64,000 nucleotides of DNA from Ostrea edulis (GCF_947568905.1 NC_079173.1:29636001-29700000); one strand, 5' to 3'. Positions 2,187 through 6,689 are shown, numbered from the stretch's first letter. A program made the numbers and translations. Notes: generated from the letters alone by a model not told the origin.

Positions 2187-5100
2187 GTAAGAAGCTTGAT
2201 GTTGTTGAGGCGTCTACGGTCCAGATAACATTAATATTCCCAACAGTACTAATTTAGATTATTTTCTATGTGAAGAAAGTAGTAAAAATATTTCAAAATT
2301 GATTATAGTAATTCAGTTAGAAACAGTGAAATTGCAAACTTTCTAAACAGTCAAAGGTTGGTGAAATTGTACTCGAGACACTTGACAGCTGAGGAATATT
2401 CAAGGTATTTTTTACTGAGCTAGATTATTTTTTGATAGGTAAAAAGATTTCCTAAATGTGTATGATCGTACTATGATTTTGTATCATGATTGATGTACAA
2501 GGGGCCTGATTGATGGCTGAATCACACACGTGCGTCCCTCAGATATTCAGAATTCTCAAGTTATTTCTGATCATAATCATGTGATAACATGATTTTGTAG
2601 AGAAATTTCAAGACCCTGGTAAATACAAGTTTAGTATTGCAGTGCTGTGATGCATTGAGACATAATGCGGCTCTGAAAACATTTGGGAGTTTATTATTGC
2701 AAGCATAACCAGCATTGTTCTGACAGATACAAGTTCAGCATTTTTTTTTTTTTTTACACCAACTGCCAAAATATTTGCAACTTTTGGGGTTCTTCCACAC
2801 CTGAATAAAATTTACAAACTTGTACCTGCTCAGGTATTTACCTGGTTTTGTGTGGGTGTTCATGTGCTCCATTTTATAATTCTTGAGTGAATTTTGTGCT
2901 TACTAAATGTGGAAACTATCTAACAAATGTTACTTAATATTTCCAGGTGTTTATACTGTTATATAATTCAATATGTGCTCATGCAGCCATATTTATTTGG
3001 ACCAATGATGTTTAATATATCAGACTTATTAAACTACAAATGTAGTATGTATGTAAACAGGGTCAATATTGTACTAATGACAGGGTGACCAGCTGTTTGT
3101 GGATAACTAATAGAATCAGATTCAATGTTTATACCAGAACCAGGTTCAATGTTTTCAAATATTTGACAAGCTAGTTATTGAAATGACACCCAGGGTTTTT
3201 AGTTTTAATTTTGACAGTTTTTGTTTTAGAAATTTTAAAAATAGAAACTTAAATGTCCATCACATGATTTCTGGAAATTGTAACTTATAATTTGTCCATT
3301 ACATGTTTTCTACATGTATGTTAATTGCGTTTTGTTCAAATTTATAATTTCCATAAAGAATTTCATTTGAAGTACAATACAACATACGTATAATAGCAAT
3401 CCTCCAAGGCCAGCAAAAAACTGTTTGATGTATCCAATAAAATTTTCGTTATTTTTCCTCTCATTTGGGAATAAATATCATTTGGCAATAAGCAATATTA
3501 TTATAAACTATTTCGTCATAAGTACTTATGGCGAAATAGTTTATAATATTGCTTATTGCCAAATGATTTATCATGAAATTATAGTTTATGATATTGCTTA
3601 TTGCCAAATGATATTTATTCCTTATGATGAAATTATAGTTTATAATATTGCTTATTGCCAAATGATATTTATTCCTTATGACGAAATTATAGCTTATAAT
3701 ATTGCTTATTGCCAAATGATATTTATTCCCAAATTCCCATGTTTTACTGTGTAGAAAAGTAGACAGTGGCTGCAGTTGTTGTCTTTTCAACTATATTCAT
3801 TTTACAACTGTAACAGGAAGGGAGAAAATGTAACAGACCAGACCCTGATTCAAACCCGGACCCACTAAATCTCTAGTCAGGTGCTCTACCAACTGAACTA
3901 TCTCTTCACAGGCGATCAAACCTGGCTGACCGTTACATTTCCCTCTCCTTAAATGTCTTCACGCTTGAAGACCTTAATCTTCTGACAGGCATTTTCACCT
4001 GTCACTTTCAGGGGCTGGTCTACGGCACCAAATGTATCAGGAAGGGAGAAAATGCAACGGACTAGACCGGGATTGAATAATGATGCACTATTGATGCTCC
4101 ACAAACAATTTGGTCACCCTATTGTCATATGTTTAATTCGTATTATAATGTATATCTTTGAAAATTATTGAACATGTATTCTGATTAACACAGTGGGTTT
4201 TGTTATATAAATCAATACATGCTAATACTCTAAGCTAATGTATTATCTTAACTTTGAAAATATACATATCTCTCTGTAAGGATCATATTAAAGGAGGTTG
4301 GACTATAACAGTGGATTTTGGCCCTGAAATAAATCCTTGGATCAGCATACATAAAACAGTTTTAAGTTAGTACACGTACAGTGTATCCCCTACCTTAAGA
4401 CCAAAGCTCTGGATTTCCCTACTCCTAGCTGTCTCAAAGATTAATTTGCTATTAATTCCTCCTTTTTTGTTTTTTTTTTGTTATCTAGATCAAAAAATCC
4501 AGAGCAACATTTTTGTCTTGGGAAGCAGAACAGTTTGTTCAAAAAAGCTCTAAAAAAAATGGGGGGGGGGGGATAATTGTATAAAAGCACCTTGATGAGC
4601 ACCTTTATTGTTTAAAAGGTTGACATGGGGGACATAATGCAAGAAATTAATAAATTAGGTCTTAGAATCTGTCACTGCAGTCTCAATATATTCTTTGTGC
4701 TACTTTGAATAAAGTATTGAAATGTTAACAATAAAAATTGGTACAATTTATTTCTGGTACAAAAGTATTGTTTTGCACTGTTTGCAGTGTTTAATATAAA
4801 GCTTATTGAAGGTGTACAATGAATGAAACAGATCAGTGTTTTCTGTGTGTGCTGTTTGATAACTTGAGGTGGTTCTCTGATTTTAGATGTCGATTTGCTA
4901 AGAGATACAGTGGACCAATACCATAAGTCCGGCTACTGTCAAGCTGGCTTCTCAGTAGCCATGGCAGCTGTAAGTCTGGCCAGAACGCTTCATTGCAAAA
5001 TCATTTGTCAATTTGTGCACAACAGTTTGAAAGAACACAATCATCAGTTTTCAAAGAACACAATTATCACTTTTGAAATTAGTCCAAATATATGTTAAAA

Positions 5101-6689
5101 GTCCACCAACACCTTCCTTCCAAAACAAGCAGATGATTATTTGTTCATTTATCTTTTGCATGATGTTTCTTTATTTCATTTATTCATTGAATGTGTTTTG
5201 CATGGATTGGACATGTTGGAAAAAGCATGCTCTTATTAATAAGTATTACTAATGCACAGAAGTAGATAATGTACAGATACAAAATAAACACTGGGTGACT
5301 GTCGTAATTGTAGTTAAGGTACTAATACTACATCATAACGGTCATTCAGGGCTTCACATTGAAACTGAAGGAAGCCTATAATAGTAATCACTTTGTCTGT
5401 CTGTCTGTATGTACTCAGTGTTAATGGTCTAAAGTCCTACAAGAGCTTTCAAAAGCTCAGTTATTGCCCTTACAATTCATTATTATTTATATACTTGTAC
5501 CTTTGTTAAGTGATATATAAGAAATACATGTGTAGATACAGTGTATATCCGTATATATAGATAAAATGAAATGAAGATGACTAATGCACAGTATAATGTA
5601 ATTTTAAAAAAGCATGAAAATACACCACCACCCCCAAAAAATCCCCCACAAATTTCATACCTGTTTTTTCAAAGTTTAGATTTTGATATAAAAGTATGTT
5701 TAGCTTATGATAAATTTAAGAGGAACAGCTCTGATTACAGAATTCAGGTCAACTGGTCAAGGTCACAAAGACGTACTAATTAAGTTTATAATCAAATAAC
5801 TAATGGAGTAACTTTTAGTTGTAAAATTTCAATGAACGATTACTGATAATTTACCAGTACTTAAGAGTCTCCTATGTATATTTTTAAATTGGTGATAACC
5901 ACAAAATTATTAGTTGAGTAAATCTTCAATATTAAAATTAAAACAGACCAAAATAATTGTTGGCAATTTAGCCATCAGAATGAAGGTACAATTGAATTAA
6001 CAGAATCTGTAAGTTTTGGGTTAATAGCTGTGTGCAATAATTGAAGATCTCTGGTAATTGTATTGCACAATCATGAAAAAAACCCAGTATTTAACAGAGA
6101 AGGTGACTTCTGTTGAGATGTATAGATTAAGTATTTAAAGTTTTGTTTTAGCAGTCTTTGTTTTGAATGTATGATTCATACTTTAAAGCATCACTTGAAA
6201 CATCTGGCCATGCCAAACCCAATATATGTACGTTCTGATTGAAAGTGCAAAACATTACATTTGCACTCTTCTAATATTTTGATATATCTATTTTAGTTAG
6301 AGTTTATATATATATGTTTGTAGATGTTGTTTTAAAAGTGTCTTGTTTTTTTGTTTTGATTTTTCATAATCTGAAATTGTTTTTCCCTGCAGCATACAGC
6401 TTGGTGTTTTGCATTTAGTGATAAACTGGTTTTTGATTACAGATGGCATAAGTAGTCTAATGTTATGGGGCTATCATCGAGTCGGATTTTGTCAGGCAGG
6501 GATGTCTGCCACGTTTTCAAATGTGAGTCTCATCACTTGTATTGTATAAAGCTGTTTACGTTGCGTCATACTCCAACTTCTTTTGTCATTGTAGCGTAAT
6601 TATTAGGTGTAAGAACTTCTTGTTAAGTGCCTGAATTCCTGGGGATAGGAAAAACCCATTGAGACAGATCAATAATAATCATCATTTAT

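What the first reader, a model, noticed from the sequence alone, without database searches (positions are those of the whole stretch)
4887..6522. The alternative exons swap Asp for Trp in the ligand-specificity loop
Counting back from the conserved Cys of G(Y/F)CQ, position -8 is Asp in exon A (three Asp in the loop) and Trp in exon B (no acidic residue). In human RGD integrins this loop carries alphaV Asp148/Asp150 and alpha5 Trp157 (about -7 to -5), which are established specificity determinants; it is also where I-domains insert. The constant exons keep the alphaV Tyr178 (FYWQG) and Asp218 (EDNKYRG) equivalents. Inference: one gene encodes two RGD receptors with different ligand preference, which vertebrates achieve with separate paralogues.
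Basis: partly seen in the sequence, partly recalled or inferred. Interest (0 to 1): 0.75.

Follow-up and report, generated by a model that had tools for sequence, protein, structure and literature searches.

The report
Oyster integrin swaps a ligand-pocket loop
A flat-oyster cell-adhesion receptor gene (an RGD-type integrin alpha chain) uses one of two alternative exons, never both, to rewrite a loop beside its ligand pocket; the switch is real, expressed and at least as old as the mollusc-brachiopod split, but it is already in public annotation and one abalone paper, and its effect on binding is untested.

Summary
The window is the Ostrea edulis "integrin alpha-8-like" gene. Exon A (4887-4969, 83 nt) and exon B (6443-6522, 80 nt) are homologous tandem exons. 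Using both or neither gives an early stop codon. Counting back from the GYCQ/GFCQ Cys, position -8 is Asp in A and Trp in B.

Spliced contigs show exon 4 joined to A, A joined to exon 6, and exon 4 joined through a microexon to B. An 18-nt microexon (2601-2618, KFQDPD) combines with either exon, so the loop has four forms, not two.

B carries the ancestral protostome motif WGYHRQGxC. A (VD...DQYH) occurs across bivalves and gastropods and in the brachiopod Lingula, always upstream of B, with Asp/Asn at -8 and Gln at -7.

The loop corresponds to the human alphaV, alpha5 and alphaIIb loop that lines the RGD pocket, and to the I-domain insertion site. A change in ligand preference is therefore plausible but unproven, and the exact residue equivalence is uncertain.

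New here: a 19-21 bp intronic RNA pairing, conserved in three oyster genera, that would loop out exon B.

RefSeq already lists these isoforms, and a 2026 abalone ITGA8 paper reports the exon-5 switch. The scan also noted this same stretch as s1-301755.

The parts
2065..2186 (+). Constant coding exon 4 (...ACAPRYVYLSTQFNKREPVGTCYLARSGSTTFEEYSPCRG). It carries the first Cys of the disulfide loop and ends in phase 1 with the base A.
   Evidence: tblastn of RefSeq isoforms. A contig piece covers 2065-2186, with joints leaving at 2186. The best PDB matches are alpha5 and alphaV.
2601..2618 (+). Optional 18-nt microexon AGAAATTTCAAGACCCTG. It adds KFQDPD to the loop and turns the split-codon Asn into Lys. 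It is neutral for reading frame and combines with exon A or B.
   Evidence: RefSeq isoforms X1, X2, X5 and X6. Its sequence has tag| and |gtaaat flanks. It lies between 2186 and exon B in an X27 contig (table 5c). It is conserved in C. virginica and Saccostrea but was not found in scallop, Pomacea or Lingula.
4887..4969 (+). Alternative exon 5A (83 nt), encoding VDLLRDTVDQYHKSGYCQAGFSVAMAA. This is the acidic, longer loop type, with Asp at -8 and Gln at -7 from the Cys.
   Evidence: Joint 2186->4887 and a loose end behind 4969 that reads into exon 6. Purifying selection. Type conserved in molluscs and Lingula.
5004..5041 (+). Conserved intronic element E1, 37-72 nt downstream of the exon 5A donor. 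Its core is GCACAACAGTTTGAAAGAACACA, complementary to E4.
   Evidence: A three-genus conserved block. E4 is its unique best duplex partner in all three oysters.
5103..5125 (+). Conserved C/U-rich intronic block E2 (caccttccttcca). Its role is unknown; it may be a binding site for a splicing regulator.
6443..6522 (+). Alternative exon 5B (80 nt), encoding GISSLMLWGYHRVGFCQAGMSATFSN. It carries the ancestral protostome WGYHRxGxC motif, with Trp at -8 and Gly at -7.
   Evidence: A contig runs 2186 -> microexon -> 6442/6443. Purifying selection. The motif is shared with arthropod PS2 and nematode pat-2.
11036..11057 (+). Conserved intronic block E3 (ttaatgttagatttagatt). Its role is unknown.
11173..11197 (+). 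Conserved intronic element E4, about 100-120 nt upstream of exon 6 (atttgtgttctttgagactgttgta). It is complementary to E1, and pairing would loop out exon 5B.
11295..11343 (+). Constant exon 6 (NGSRILIGAPGAFYWQG), which holds the alphaV Tyr178 equivalent.
   Evidence: (loose-end sequence).
12261..12347 (+). Constant exon 7 (QVYNYWLDLNNNKLSTREEGASEDNKYRG). The Asp of EDNKYRG aligns to alphaV Asp218, the residue that binds the Arg of RGD.
   Evidence: PMC3317794 and PMC8301328 for the role of D218.

Best explanation
**What it is.** This is the Ostrea edulis PS2-type (alphaV / alpha5 / alpha8 / alphaIIb-like) integrin alpha gene. Coding exon 5 exists as two tandem copies, A then B. [quoted passage not shown]

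**Shown.**
- Each exon is 2 mod 3 in length. Only transcripts with exactly one of them stay in frame.
- Both forms are made.
- An 18-nt microexon upstream can be added to either, giving four loops.
- B is the ancestral protostome loop (WGYHRQGxC).
- A arose by tandem duplication before molluscs and brachiopods split. It has since kept a longer acidic loop (VD...DQ-YH).

**Inferred.**
- The homologous human loop forms one wall of the RGD pocket (alphaV D148/D150, alpha5 D154/W157). The other wall, the Tyr178 and Asp218 equivalents, is constant. The swap therefore most likely retunes which RGD-type ligands are bound, or how tightly, exchanging an acidic wall for an aromatic one.
- In oysters, exon choice is probably biased by a conserved 19-21 bp RNA duplex. 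It pairs a site just downstream of exon A with a site just upstream of exon 6. This would loop out exon B and bring the A donor next to the exon 6 acceptor.
For: **Gene identity.** Exons are 100% identical to O. edulis RefSeq isoforms X1-X8.

**Clade.** PDB ranking is alphaV 5e-150 > alpha5 1e-142 > alphaIIb 2e-119 >> alpha4 1e-80 > alpha6 2e-67. The AlphaFold propeller models have pLDDT 90.8 and 89.0 and TM 0.86-0.89 to alphaV and alpha5.

**Reading frame.** A+B gives a stop 3 codons into B. Using neither gives a stop 19 codons on.

**RNA.** Joint 2186->4887 (GT..AG, depth 57). Joint 2186->microexon->6442/3 (depth 55). The sequence behind 4969 reads into exon 6. A second species' 3.5-kb transcript contig joins exon 4 to A. 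No A->B joint is listed.

**Conservation.**
- A/B isoform pairs are annotated in oysters, mussels, scallops, a clam, limpet, abalone, Pomacea, Babylonia, Biomphalaria and Physella.
- The genomic order A(A'),B holds in C. virginica, Saccostrea, Argopecten, Pomacea, Pinctada and Lingula.
- A single B-type loop is found in Daphnia and a single loop in the nemertean Tubulanus.
- Type-specific residues hold: A has D/N at -8 and Q at -7 in 26 of 26 distinct loops.
- Change between oyster genera is mostly synonymous.

**Loop homology.**. [quoted passage not shown] AlphaV D150 and D218 form salt bridges to the RGD Arg (PMC8301328).

**Precedents.** PS2 splice forms bind different ligands (PMC2148222, citing Graner 1998). 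Alpha7 X1/X2 differ in function (PMC2132957).

**RNA duplex.** Across more than 9 kb of introns only four blocks are conserved among three oyster genera, and two of these are mutually complementary. Each is the other's unique best partner, at -29.5 to -35 kcal/mol, against -18 to -22 for shuffled controls.
Against: - There are no binding data for any mollusc isoform.
- Oyster loops are 6-7 residues longer than the human ones, so -8 cannot be mapped with certainty. The Trp aligns beside alpha5 W157, not on it.
- AlphaFold confidence in the variable stretch is only 64-73, and falls below 50 in the oyster-specific GISS segment of B. I had no coordinates to measure distances to the pocket.
- Trp at -8 is not universal in mollusc B exons: scallop and Babylonia have Leu, Biomphalaria and Physella have Phe, Pinctada has Tyr.
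- The RNA evidence is from assembled contigs of runs not labelled as RNA, one contig per junction. Eight joints were not displayed.
- The RNA duplex shows only one-sided changes (A-U, G.U, G.G), with no double compensation.
- No matching selector was found for exon B.
- The pairing was not found in scallop, Pinctada, Pomacea or Lingula.
Confidence: 0.6

Rival explanations
1. The isoforms bind the same ligands. They differ in affinity, activation threshold, cation dependence or an accessory ('synergy-site'-like) contact, not in ligand identity.
For: In alpha5 the same loop also carries D154, which serves the fibronectin synergy site rather than RGD itself (PMC3317794). The residues aligned to alphaV D150 (-5, His) and to Tyr178 and Asp218 are the same in both isoforms. 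The microexon adds still more charge to the N-terminal half of the loop, away from -8.
Against: D/Q against W/G at -8/-7 has been conserved by exon type over hundreds of millions of years, next to the position of alpha5 W157. That residue is a documented specificity determinant (Humphries 2000, cited in PMC3317794).
Confidence: 0.25
2. The loop swap serves something other than matrix-ligand binding. Candidates are the choice of beta-subunit partner, cis interactions, or avoiding a pathogen or parasite that uses the integrin as a receptor.
For: The loop is surface-exposed and poorly ordered in the models. Oysters have many beta subunits, which I did not examine.
Against: In solved integrins this loop faces the ligand, not the alpha/beta interface (established knowledge; PMC3317794). 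Strong purifying selection and deep conservation of both types argue against an arms-race diversifier.
Confidence: 0.1
3. One of the two exons is a decaying duplicate or splicing noise, and only one isoform matters.
For: Single-model annotations in Lingula and Pinctada list only the A form.
Against: Both exons keep intact splice sites, length and phase in every genome examined, including the unannotated B exons of Lingula and Pinctada. Substitutions are mostly synonymous. The two junction contigs have similar depth (57 and 55). B is the form shared with arthropods and nematodes.
Confidence: 0.03

Closest known systems
Abalone (Haliotis gigantea) ITGA8 exon 5-1/5-2 mutually exclusive exons (Adv Sci 2026, PMC13170236)
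   Same: It is the same gene family and the same coding exon. In oysters the alternative exon is also coding exon 5. Haliotis RefSeq isoforms differ in exactly this loop, as A, A' and B types. That paper showed the switch by RT-PCR, Sanger sequencing and a minigene.
   Different: The paper focuses on a third, exon-skipping isoform and on muscle colour. In the text I could search, it gives no residue-level reading, no cross-phylum conservation and no RNA pairing. Its exon sequences are in figures I could not read, so the equivalence rests on exon number and the RefSeq isoforms. The oyster has two alternative exons plus a microexon, whereas abalone RefSeq shows three alternatives.
Vertebrate integrin alpha7 (and alpha6) X1/X2 alternative extracellular exons
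   Same: Alternative exons inside the alpha-subunit propeller change how the receptor behaves towards its ligand (PMC2132957).
   Different: These are laminin-type alpha chains. From my own knowledge, the X1/X2 segment lies after the FYWQG strand (between repeats III and IV), one loop downstream of the Cys loop swapped here.
Drosophila alphaPS2 splice forms (C and m8)
   Same: The PS2 clade is the same, and splice forms differ in which RGD ligands they bind (PMC2148222, citing Graner et al. 1998).
   Different: This is a cassette exon that is included or skipped, not a mutually exclusive pair. From my own knowledge it lies after YWQG. That fits the optional 9-residue insert seen there in crustacean isoforms and the long form in a beetle. 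Arthropods keep a single B-type Cys loop.
Human RGD-integrin paralogues alphaV, alpha5 and alphaIIb: the Cys142-Cys155-type loop
   Same: It is the homologous loop. It holds alphaV D148/D150 and alpha5 D154/W157, at -5 to -10 from the second Cys, lining the ligand pocket (PMC3317794, PMC8301328). From my own knowledge it also holds alphaIIb F160. By my count from the alignment, the alphaIIb loop is long (20 residues), like the mollusc A type (18-19).
   Different: In vertebrates the variants are fixed in separate genes. Here they are alternative exons of one gene.
Long-range intronic RNA pairing that selects among mutually exclusive exons (Drosophila Dscam1, 14-3-3xi type; from my own knowledge)
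   Same: Conserved complementary intronic elements flank the variable region. Pairing would loop out the competing exon and bring a donor and an acceptor together.
   Different: Only one pair was found, serving exon A. There is no set of competing selectors and no double compensatory change. The pairing is restricted to Ostreidae among the genomes checked, and it is untested.

Membership tests
Integrin alpha subunit, RGD-binding PS2 / alphaV / alpha5 / alpha8 / alphaIIb clade | Seven-bladed FG-GAP beta-propeller without an inserted I-domain, followed by thigh and calf Ig-like domains | tested here: met
   Pfam PF01839, PF08441, PF20805 and PF20806 are on the RefSeq proteins. The AlphaFold propeller has pLDDT 90.8, and Foldseek gives TM 0.86-0.89 to alphaV and alpha5.
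Integrin alpha subunit, RGD-binding PS2 / alphaV / alpha5 / alpha8 / alphaIIb clade | Closer to alphaV, alpha5 and alphaIIb than to the laminin-type (alpha6), alpha4-type or I-domain alpha chains | tested here: met
   The phmmer ranking is alphaV 5e-150, alpha5 1e-142, alphaIIb 2e-119, alpha4 1e-80, alpha6 2e-67, alphaM 2e-44. No formal tree was built.
Integrin alpha subunit, RGD-binding PS2 / alphaV / alpha5 / alpha8 / alphaIIb clade | The Asp that binds the Arg of RGD (alphaV D218 position) and the alphaV Tyr178 position are conserved | tested here: met
   The HMMER alignment pairs the D of EDNKYRGYS with D218, and the Y of FYWQG with Y178.
Integrin alpha subunit, RGD-binding PS2 / alphaV / alpha5 / alpha8 / alphaIIb clade | Membrane-proximal GFFKR-type motif and a basic cleavage site in the calf region | tested here: met
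   CGFFRRKR lies at 41653-41778, after a transmembrane segment at 41137-41319. Basic sites GRKKRQ (about 30.2 kb) and RRHTRQKRD (about 37.1 kb) are present. Cleavage itself was not tested.
Integrin alpha subunit, RGD-binding PS2 / alphaV / alpha5 / alpha8 / alphaIIb clade | Actual binding of RGD-containing ligands | not testable with these tools
   This needs expression with a beta subunit and adhesion or binding assays.
Mutually exclusive exon cluster from tandem exon duplication | Adjacent homologous exons of similar length with the same splice phases | tested here: met
   The exons are 83 and 80 nt. Both start with the split-codon bases AT and end in phase 0. They share YH(K/R)xG(Y/F)CQAG.
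Mutually exclusive exon cluster from tandem exon duplication | Mature transcripts contain exactly one of the exons | tested here: met
   Contig joints show exon 4 to A, A to exon 6, and exon 4 through the microexon to B. No A to B joint is listed. The eight RefSeq isoforms each hold one of the two. The limits are that these are contigs, one per junction, and 8 joints were not displayed.
Mutually exclusive exon cluster from tandem exon duplication | Including both exons or neither destroys the reading frame | tested here: met
   In-silico splicing gives early stop codons in both cases.
Mutually exclusive exon cluster from tandem exon duplication | Both copies are conserved across species | tested here: met
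   The span is Mollusca plus the brachiopod Lingula.
Exon choice set by long-range RNA pairing (Dscam / 14-3-3xi type) | Conserved complementary intronic elements placed so that pairing loops out the competing exon | tested here: met
   E1 (5004-5041) and E4 (11173-11197) are conserved in three oyster genera. Each is the other's unique best partner, pairing over 19-21 bp.
Exon choice set by long-range RNA pairing (Dscam / 14-3-3xi type) | Compensatory (two-sided) base changes that keep the pairing | tested here: inconclusive
   With three species, only A-U, G.U and G.G variation at one pair and U-A or U.G at another were seen.
Exon choice set by long-range RNA pairing (Dscam / 14-3-3xi type) | A competing selector for every alternative exon | tested here: not met
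   No conserved block or strong duplex was found for exon B.
Vertebrate alpha6/alpha7 X1/X2 exon pair | The alternative segment lies after the FYWQG strand, between repeats III and IV | tested here: not met
   The oyster pair lies before FYWQG and encodes the Cys loop. The X1/X2 position is from my own knowledge. The two are analogous, not the same exon pair.

The most novel reading that the evidence does not exclude
The protostome RGD integrin has carried a swappable wall of its ligand pocket since before molluscs and brachiopods diverged. One form is an ancestral aromatic loop and the other a derived acidic, longer loop. Further variants came later, from a microexon in oysters and a third exon in gastropods. 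The Asp-Gln / Trp-Gly exchange really does switch ligand selectivity. In oysters the choice is set by a 20-bp long-range RNA duplex, possibly read by double-stranded-RNA-binding splicing factors such as the ILF2 implicated in abalone.
Probability: 0.3. Interest if true: 0.65.

Novelty: new member of a known kind. Interest (0 to 1): 0.45.

Why it matters
Integrin ligand specificity is usually explained by gene duplication. Here one gene produces several versions of a pocket-lining loop, and has done so since at least the mollusc-brachiopod split. This gives a natural loop-swap experiment on what the alpha-subunit Cys loop contributes to RGD recognition.

It also gives a compact two-exon system, with a candidate RNA-pairing switch, for studying mutually exclusive splicing outside insects and vertebrates. 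Oysters and abalone are farmed, and the abalone work already links splicing of this gene to a commercial trait.

The limit is that the existence of the switch is not new. Only its depth, its type-specific residues, the microexon combinations and the candidate RNA duplex are added here.

Tried and rejected
- **RNA runs.** No run is on record as RNA. I laid contigs of four unlabelled runs. Two of them, X28 and X26, gave no spliced joints here.
- **Model geometry.** The structure tools return no coordinates, so the distance from the variable residues to the pocket could not be measured. No alpha/beta/RGD complex could be modelled.
- **Aligning the A loop to alphaV.** HMMER places an arbitrary 6-residue gap, so I did not use it for residue equivalence. 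I used the gapless alignment of the 12-residue B loop to alpha5 instead.
- **A reciprocal RNA pairing that would loop out exon A.** No conserved blocks lie in the introns between exon 4, the microexon and exon A, and there is no strong duplex for exon B.
- **The E1:E4 pairing outside Ostreidae.** It was not found in Argopecten, Pomacea, Lingula or Pinctada.
- **An A-type exon outside Mollusca and Brachiopoda.** It is absent from the Daphnia and Tubulanus loci. A 'DQYHKSG' hit in Daphnia (L007:10052-10084) is a chance match: it sits in the wrong place, lacks the CQAG motif and is not in the protein. Annelids and other phyla were not sampled.
- **Look-ups that gave nothing.** Tubulanus isoform X2 and C. 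angulata X2 are not on record. The Haliotis gene is too long to fetch. No Magallana locus was obtained.
- **Flanking-intron identity.** Global alignment gave 58-80%, which was uninformative. It was replaced by the conserved-block scan.
- **Poly-G tract after exon B as a splicing element.** Rejected, because it is absent from the other two oysters.
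Full report
**What is at the coordinates.**

The + strand of the window carries an integrin alpha gene from about 2 kb to 41.8 kb. It has a transmembrane segment at 41137-41319 and a CGFFRRKR tail.

Exon A is bounded by AG|4887...4969|GTAAGT (83 nt). Exon B is bounded by AG|6443...6522|GTGAGT (80 nt). Both begin with the bases AT, which complete a codon started by the last A of the upstream exon (2065-2186, ending ...EYSPCRG).

The two isoforms therefore read:
- A: CRG-N-VDLLRDTVDQYHKSGYCQAGFSVAMAA
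- B: CRG-N-GISSLMLWGYHRVGFCQAGMSATFSN

Each is followed by NGSRILIGAPGAFYWQG (exon 6, 11295-11343). Counting back from the second Cys, -8 is Asp in A, which has three Asp. It is Trp in B, which has no acidic residue.

**Whose gene it is.**

A profile-free search with one exon returned a close full-length relative. A word search with that relative then found oyster "integrin alpha-8-like" proteins. All window exons are 100% identical to Ostrea edulis RefSeq isoforms X1-X8.

Those eight isoforms are the full 2x2x2 set of three choices:
- exon A or exon B;
- with or without an 18-nt microexon;
- with or without a 30-nt cassette (GGFNSEGSDL, 20808-20837).

The microexon lies at 2601-2618 (tag|AGAAATTTCAAGACCCTG|gtaaat). 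It inserts KFQDPD and changes the split-codon Asn to Lys. The oyster therefore makes four versions of the loop, not two.

**Are the exons mutually exclusive and expressed?**

In-silico splicing shows that A+B runs into a stop three codons into B. Skipping both gives a stop 19 codons later. The microexon is neutral for frame.

No run is labelled as RNA. Contigs of run X27 (same organism) nevertheless carry spliced joints at a depth of about 55, over an intronic background of 3-6:
- 2186->4887 (GT..AG);
- 2186->6442/3 with the letters AGAAATTTCAAGACCCT in between, which is the microexon;
- behind 4969, the sequence AATGGCAGCCGAATTTTGATTGGTGCACC, which is the start of exon 6.

A 3.5-kb contig from another organism (X25) also joins exon 4 directly to A. 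No A-to-B joint is listed, although eight weaker joints were not displayed. This is contig-level evidence with one contig per junction, but it agrees with RefSeq.

**Which integrin it is.**

Against all PDB chains the protein ranks alphaV (5e-150), alpha5 (1e-142), alphaIIb (2e-119), then alpha4 (1e-80), alpha6 (2e-67) and the I-domain alpha chains.

AlphaFold models of the propeller with either exon are confident overall (pLDDT 90.8 and 89.0, pTM 0.91 and 0.90). They superpose on alphaV and alpha5 at TM 0.86-0.89.

The alignment to alphaV fixes the numbering as C142...C155, Y178 in FYWQG, and D218 as the first D of FDDSYLGYS. The oyster residues Y in AFYWQG and D in EDNKYRGYS align to these, and both lie in constant exons. 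The alignment to alpha5 gives C151...C164 with W157 at -7.

I-domain alpha chains align only from oyster residue 228, the 'YC229QAG' strand, onward. This fits the I-domain being inserted at this loop.

**What the loop does in known integrins.**

- In alphaV-beta3 the Arg of RGD forms salt bridges with D218 and D150 (PMC8301328).
- D154 of the same alpha5 loop serves the fibronectin synergy site (PMC3317794, citing Humphries 2000).

The loop rewritten by exons A and B is therefore the right one for a specificity switch.

The exact residue mapping is not secure. Most protostome B-type loops have 12 residues between the Cys, as in alphaV and alpha5. They align without gaps, which puts the Trp on alpha5 S156, next to W157. 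The oyster loops have 18 (B) and 19 (A) residues, or 24 and 25 with the microexon. HMMER places the A-type Asp in an insertion.

In the models, the first six residues of the A loop (RGNVDL) form a short helix. The rest of the variable stretch has pLDDT about 64-73, and falls below 50 in the oyster-specific GISS segment of B. The tools return no coordinates, so I could not measure distances to the pocket.

**How old and how constrained.**

RefSeq lists A- and B-type isoforms of the orthologous gene in many molluscs:
- four oyster genera, mussels, scallops and Mercenaria;
- Patella, Haliotis, Pomacea and Babylonia (two genes);
- Biomphalaria and Physella.

Haliotis, Pomacea and Babylonia have three alternatives: A, a second A-like exon, and B.

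Genomic loci show the same order, A (then A') then B. All exons are 2 mod 3 in length where I measured exon lengths. The loci are C. virginica, Saccostrea, Argopecten, Pomacea, Pinctada and the brachiopod Lingula. In Lingula and Pinctada an intact B exon is present but missing from the single annotated model.

A Daphnia orthologue has one B-type exon. A nemertean orthologue has the loop fused to the upstream exon.

Counts over the distinct loops:
- Among 26 distinct A loops, -8 is Asp in 24 and Asn in 2, and -7 is Gln in all.
- Among 99 B/single-type loops, -8 is Trp in 75. The fish alphaV loops in this set account for most of the polar residues there.
- In mollusc B exons, -8 is Trp, Leu, Phe or Tyr, and -7 is nearly always Gly.

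B (WGYHRQGxC) is therefore the ancestral protostome loop, shared with arthropod PS2 and nematode pat-2. A (VD-x5-6-DQ-YH) is a duplicate that arose before molluscs and brachiopods split.

Between Ostrea and C. virginica, exon A has 13 synonymous and 4 non-synonymous differences, and exon B has 6 and 2. Both exons are under purifying selection.

**A candidate mechanism for exon choice (not in the finding).**

I aligned the introns of Ostrea, Crassostrea and Saccostrea. Only four conserved blocks appear in more than 9 kb. Two of them are complementary to each other:
- E1 (5004-5041) lies 37-72 nt after the exon A donor.
- E4 (11173-11197) lies about 100-120 nt before exon 6.

In each of the three genomes, E1's best partner anywhere in the region is E4, and the reverse also holds. 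The duplex energies are -29.5 to -35 kcal/mol, against -18 to -22 on average for shuffled elements. The next-best partners reach -19 to -26. The duplex is 19-21 bp.

Pairing would loop out exon B, across 6.1 kb in O. edulis and 2.3-2.7 kb in the other two. It would bring the A donor next to the exon 6 acceptor.

The sequence changes are only one-sided (A-U, G.U, G.G). No counterpart exists for exon B. The pairing was not found in scallop, Pinctada, Pomacea or Lingula. It remains an inference, and it is limited to Ostreidae so far.

**What is already known.**

[quoted passage not shown] It proposes from homology models that the propeller changes affect ligand binding (PMC13170236).
- In oysters the alternative exon is likewise coding exon 5, and Haliotis RefSeq isoforms differ in exactly this loop. 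I take them to be the same switch, although the paper's sequences are in figures I could not read.
- A further literature search found no other paper on integrin alpha mutually exclusive exons in molluscs.
- Functional precedents exist for splice-dependent ligand choice in Drosophila PS2 (PMC2148222) and vertebrate alpha7 X1/X2 (PMC2132957). Both affect the next segment of the propeller, not this loop.

**Verdict.**

- The ligand-preference switch is still an inference, and the residue equivalence is approximate.
- There are four loop variants, not two.
- The contrast with vertebrates is overstated.

The existence of the switch is already in RefSeq and in one paper.
- its depth, reaching Mollusca plus Brachiopoda;
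- the polarity, with B ancestral;
- the type-defining residues and the microexon combinations;
- a candidate RNA-duplex mechanism in oysters.

The scan's own index lists the same stretch as s1-301755 (frame-enforced mutually exclusive exons), which agrees with this result.

Noticed in passing
window 20808-20837: A 30-nt cassette exon (GGFNSEGSDL) is optional in RefSeq isoforms. It sits in a propeller loop that AlphaFold models with pLDDT below 50 (model residues about 330-334).
   Followed up: partly
window 6691-6743: A run of 53 G sits in the intron 169 nt downstream of exon 5B. It is absent at the same place in C. virginica and Saccostrea, and contigs break there. It is probably a species-specific or unstable homopolymer, not a conserved splicing element.
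   Followed up: partly
window 3741-4138: A very high-copy repeat lies in the intron between the microexon and exon A. Contig depths are in the thousands, with many rearranged joints, and its ORF fragments resemble tRNA-derived SINE sequence seen elsewhere in the window.
   Followed up: no
L001:11719-11777 (Lingula anatina): An intact B-type exon (AWGYHRQGSCQAGFSAVLI, 59 nt, ttccag|...|gttagt) lies about 900 nt downstream of the annotated A exon. It is missing from the single RefSeq model.
   Followed up: yes
L008 (Pinctada imbricata), Cys codons at 16199 and 19492: The annotated model uses exon A only. An intact B-type exon (GTSRFLMYGYHRVGYCQAGISATFSQ) follows it, with Tyr instead of Trp at -8 and the same N-terminal extension as in oysters.
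   Followed up: partly
L006 (Pomacea canaliculata), Cys codons at 27626, 28244, 30948; RefSeq isoforms of Haliotis and Babylonia: Caenogastropods and abalone have three alternative loop exons in the order A, A', B. Patella isoforms also show an A and a second A-like loop.
   Followed up: partly
RefSeq isoforms of Biomphalaria glabrata (P0337-P0339, P0167) and Physella acuta (P0170, P0366-P0368): The next exon, which holds the alphaV Asp218-equivalent region, also comes in two alternative versions in these freshwater snails. Both walls of the Arg pocket may therefore be swappable there.
   Followed up: no
RefSeq isoforms of Penaeus japonicus and Procambarus clarkii (P0174/P0370, P0186/P0371): Crustacean PS2 isoforms differ by an optional 9-residue insert directly after FYWQGQ. 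This is probably the counterpart of the Drosophila PS2 cassette, and their Cys loop is invariant.
   Followed up: no
window 5103-5125 and 11036-11057: Two further intronic blocks are conserved among three oyster genera: a C/U-rich one after exon A, and ttaatgttagatttagatt before exon 6. They are not complementary to each other and their role is unknown.
   Followed up: partly
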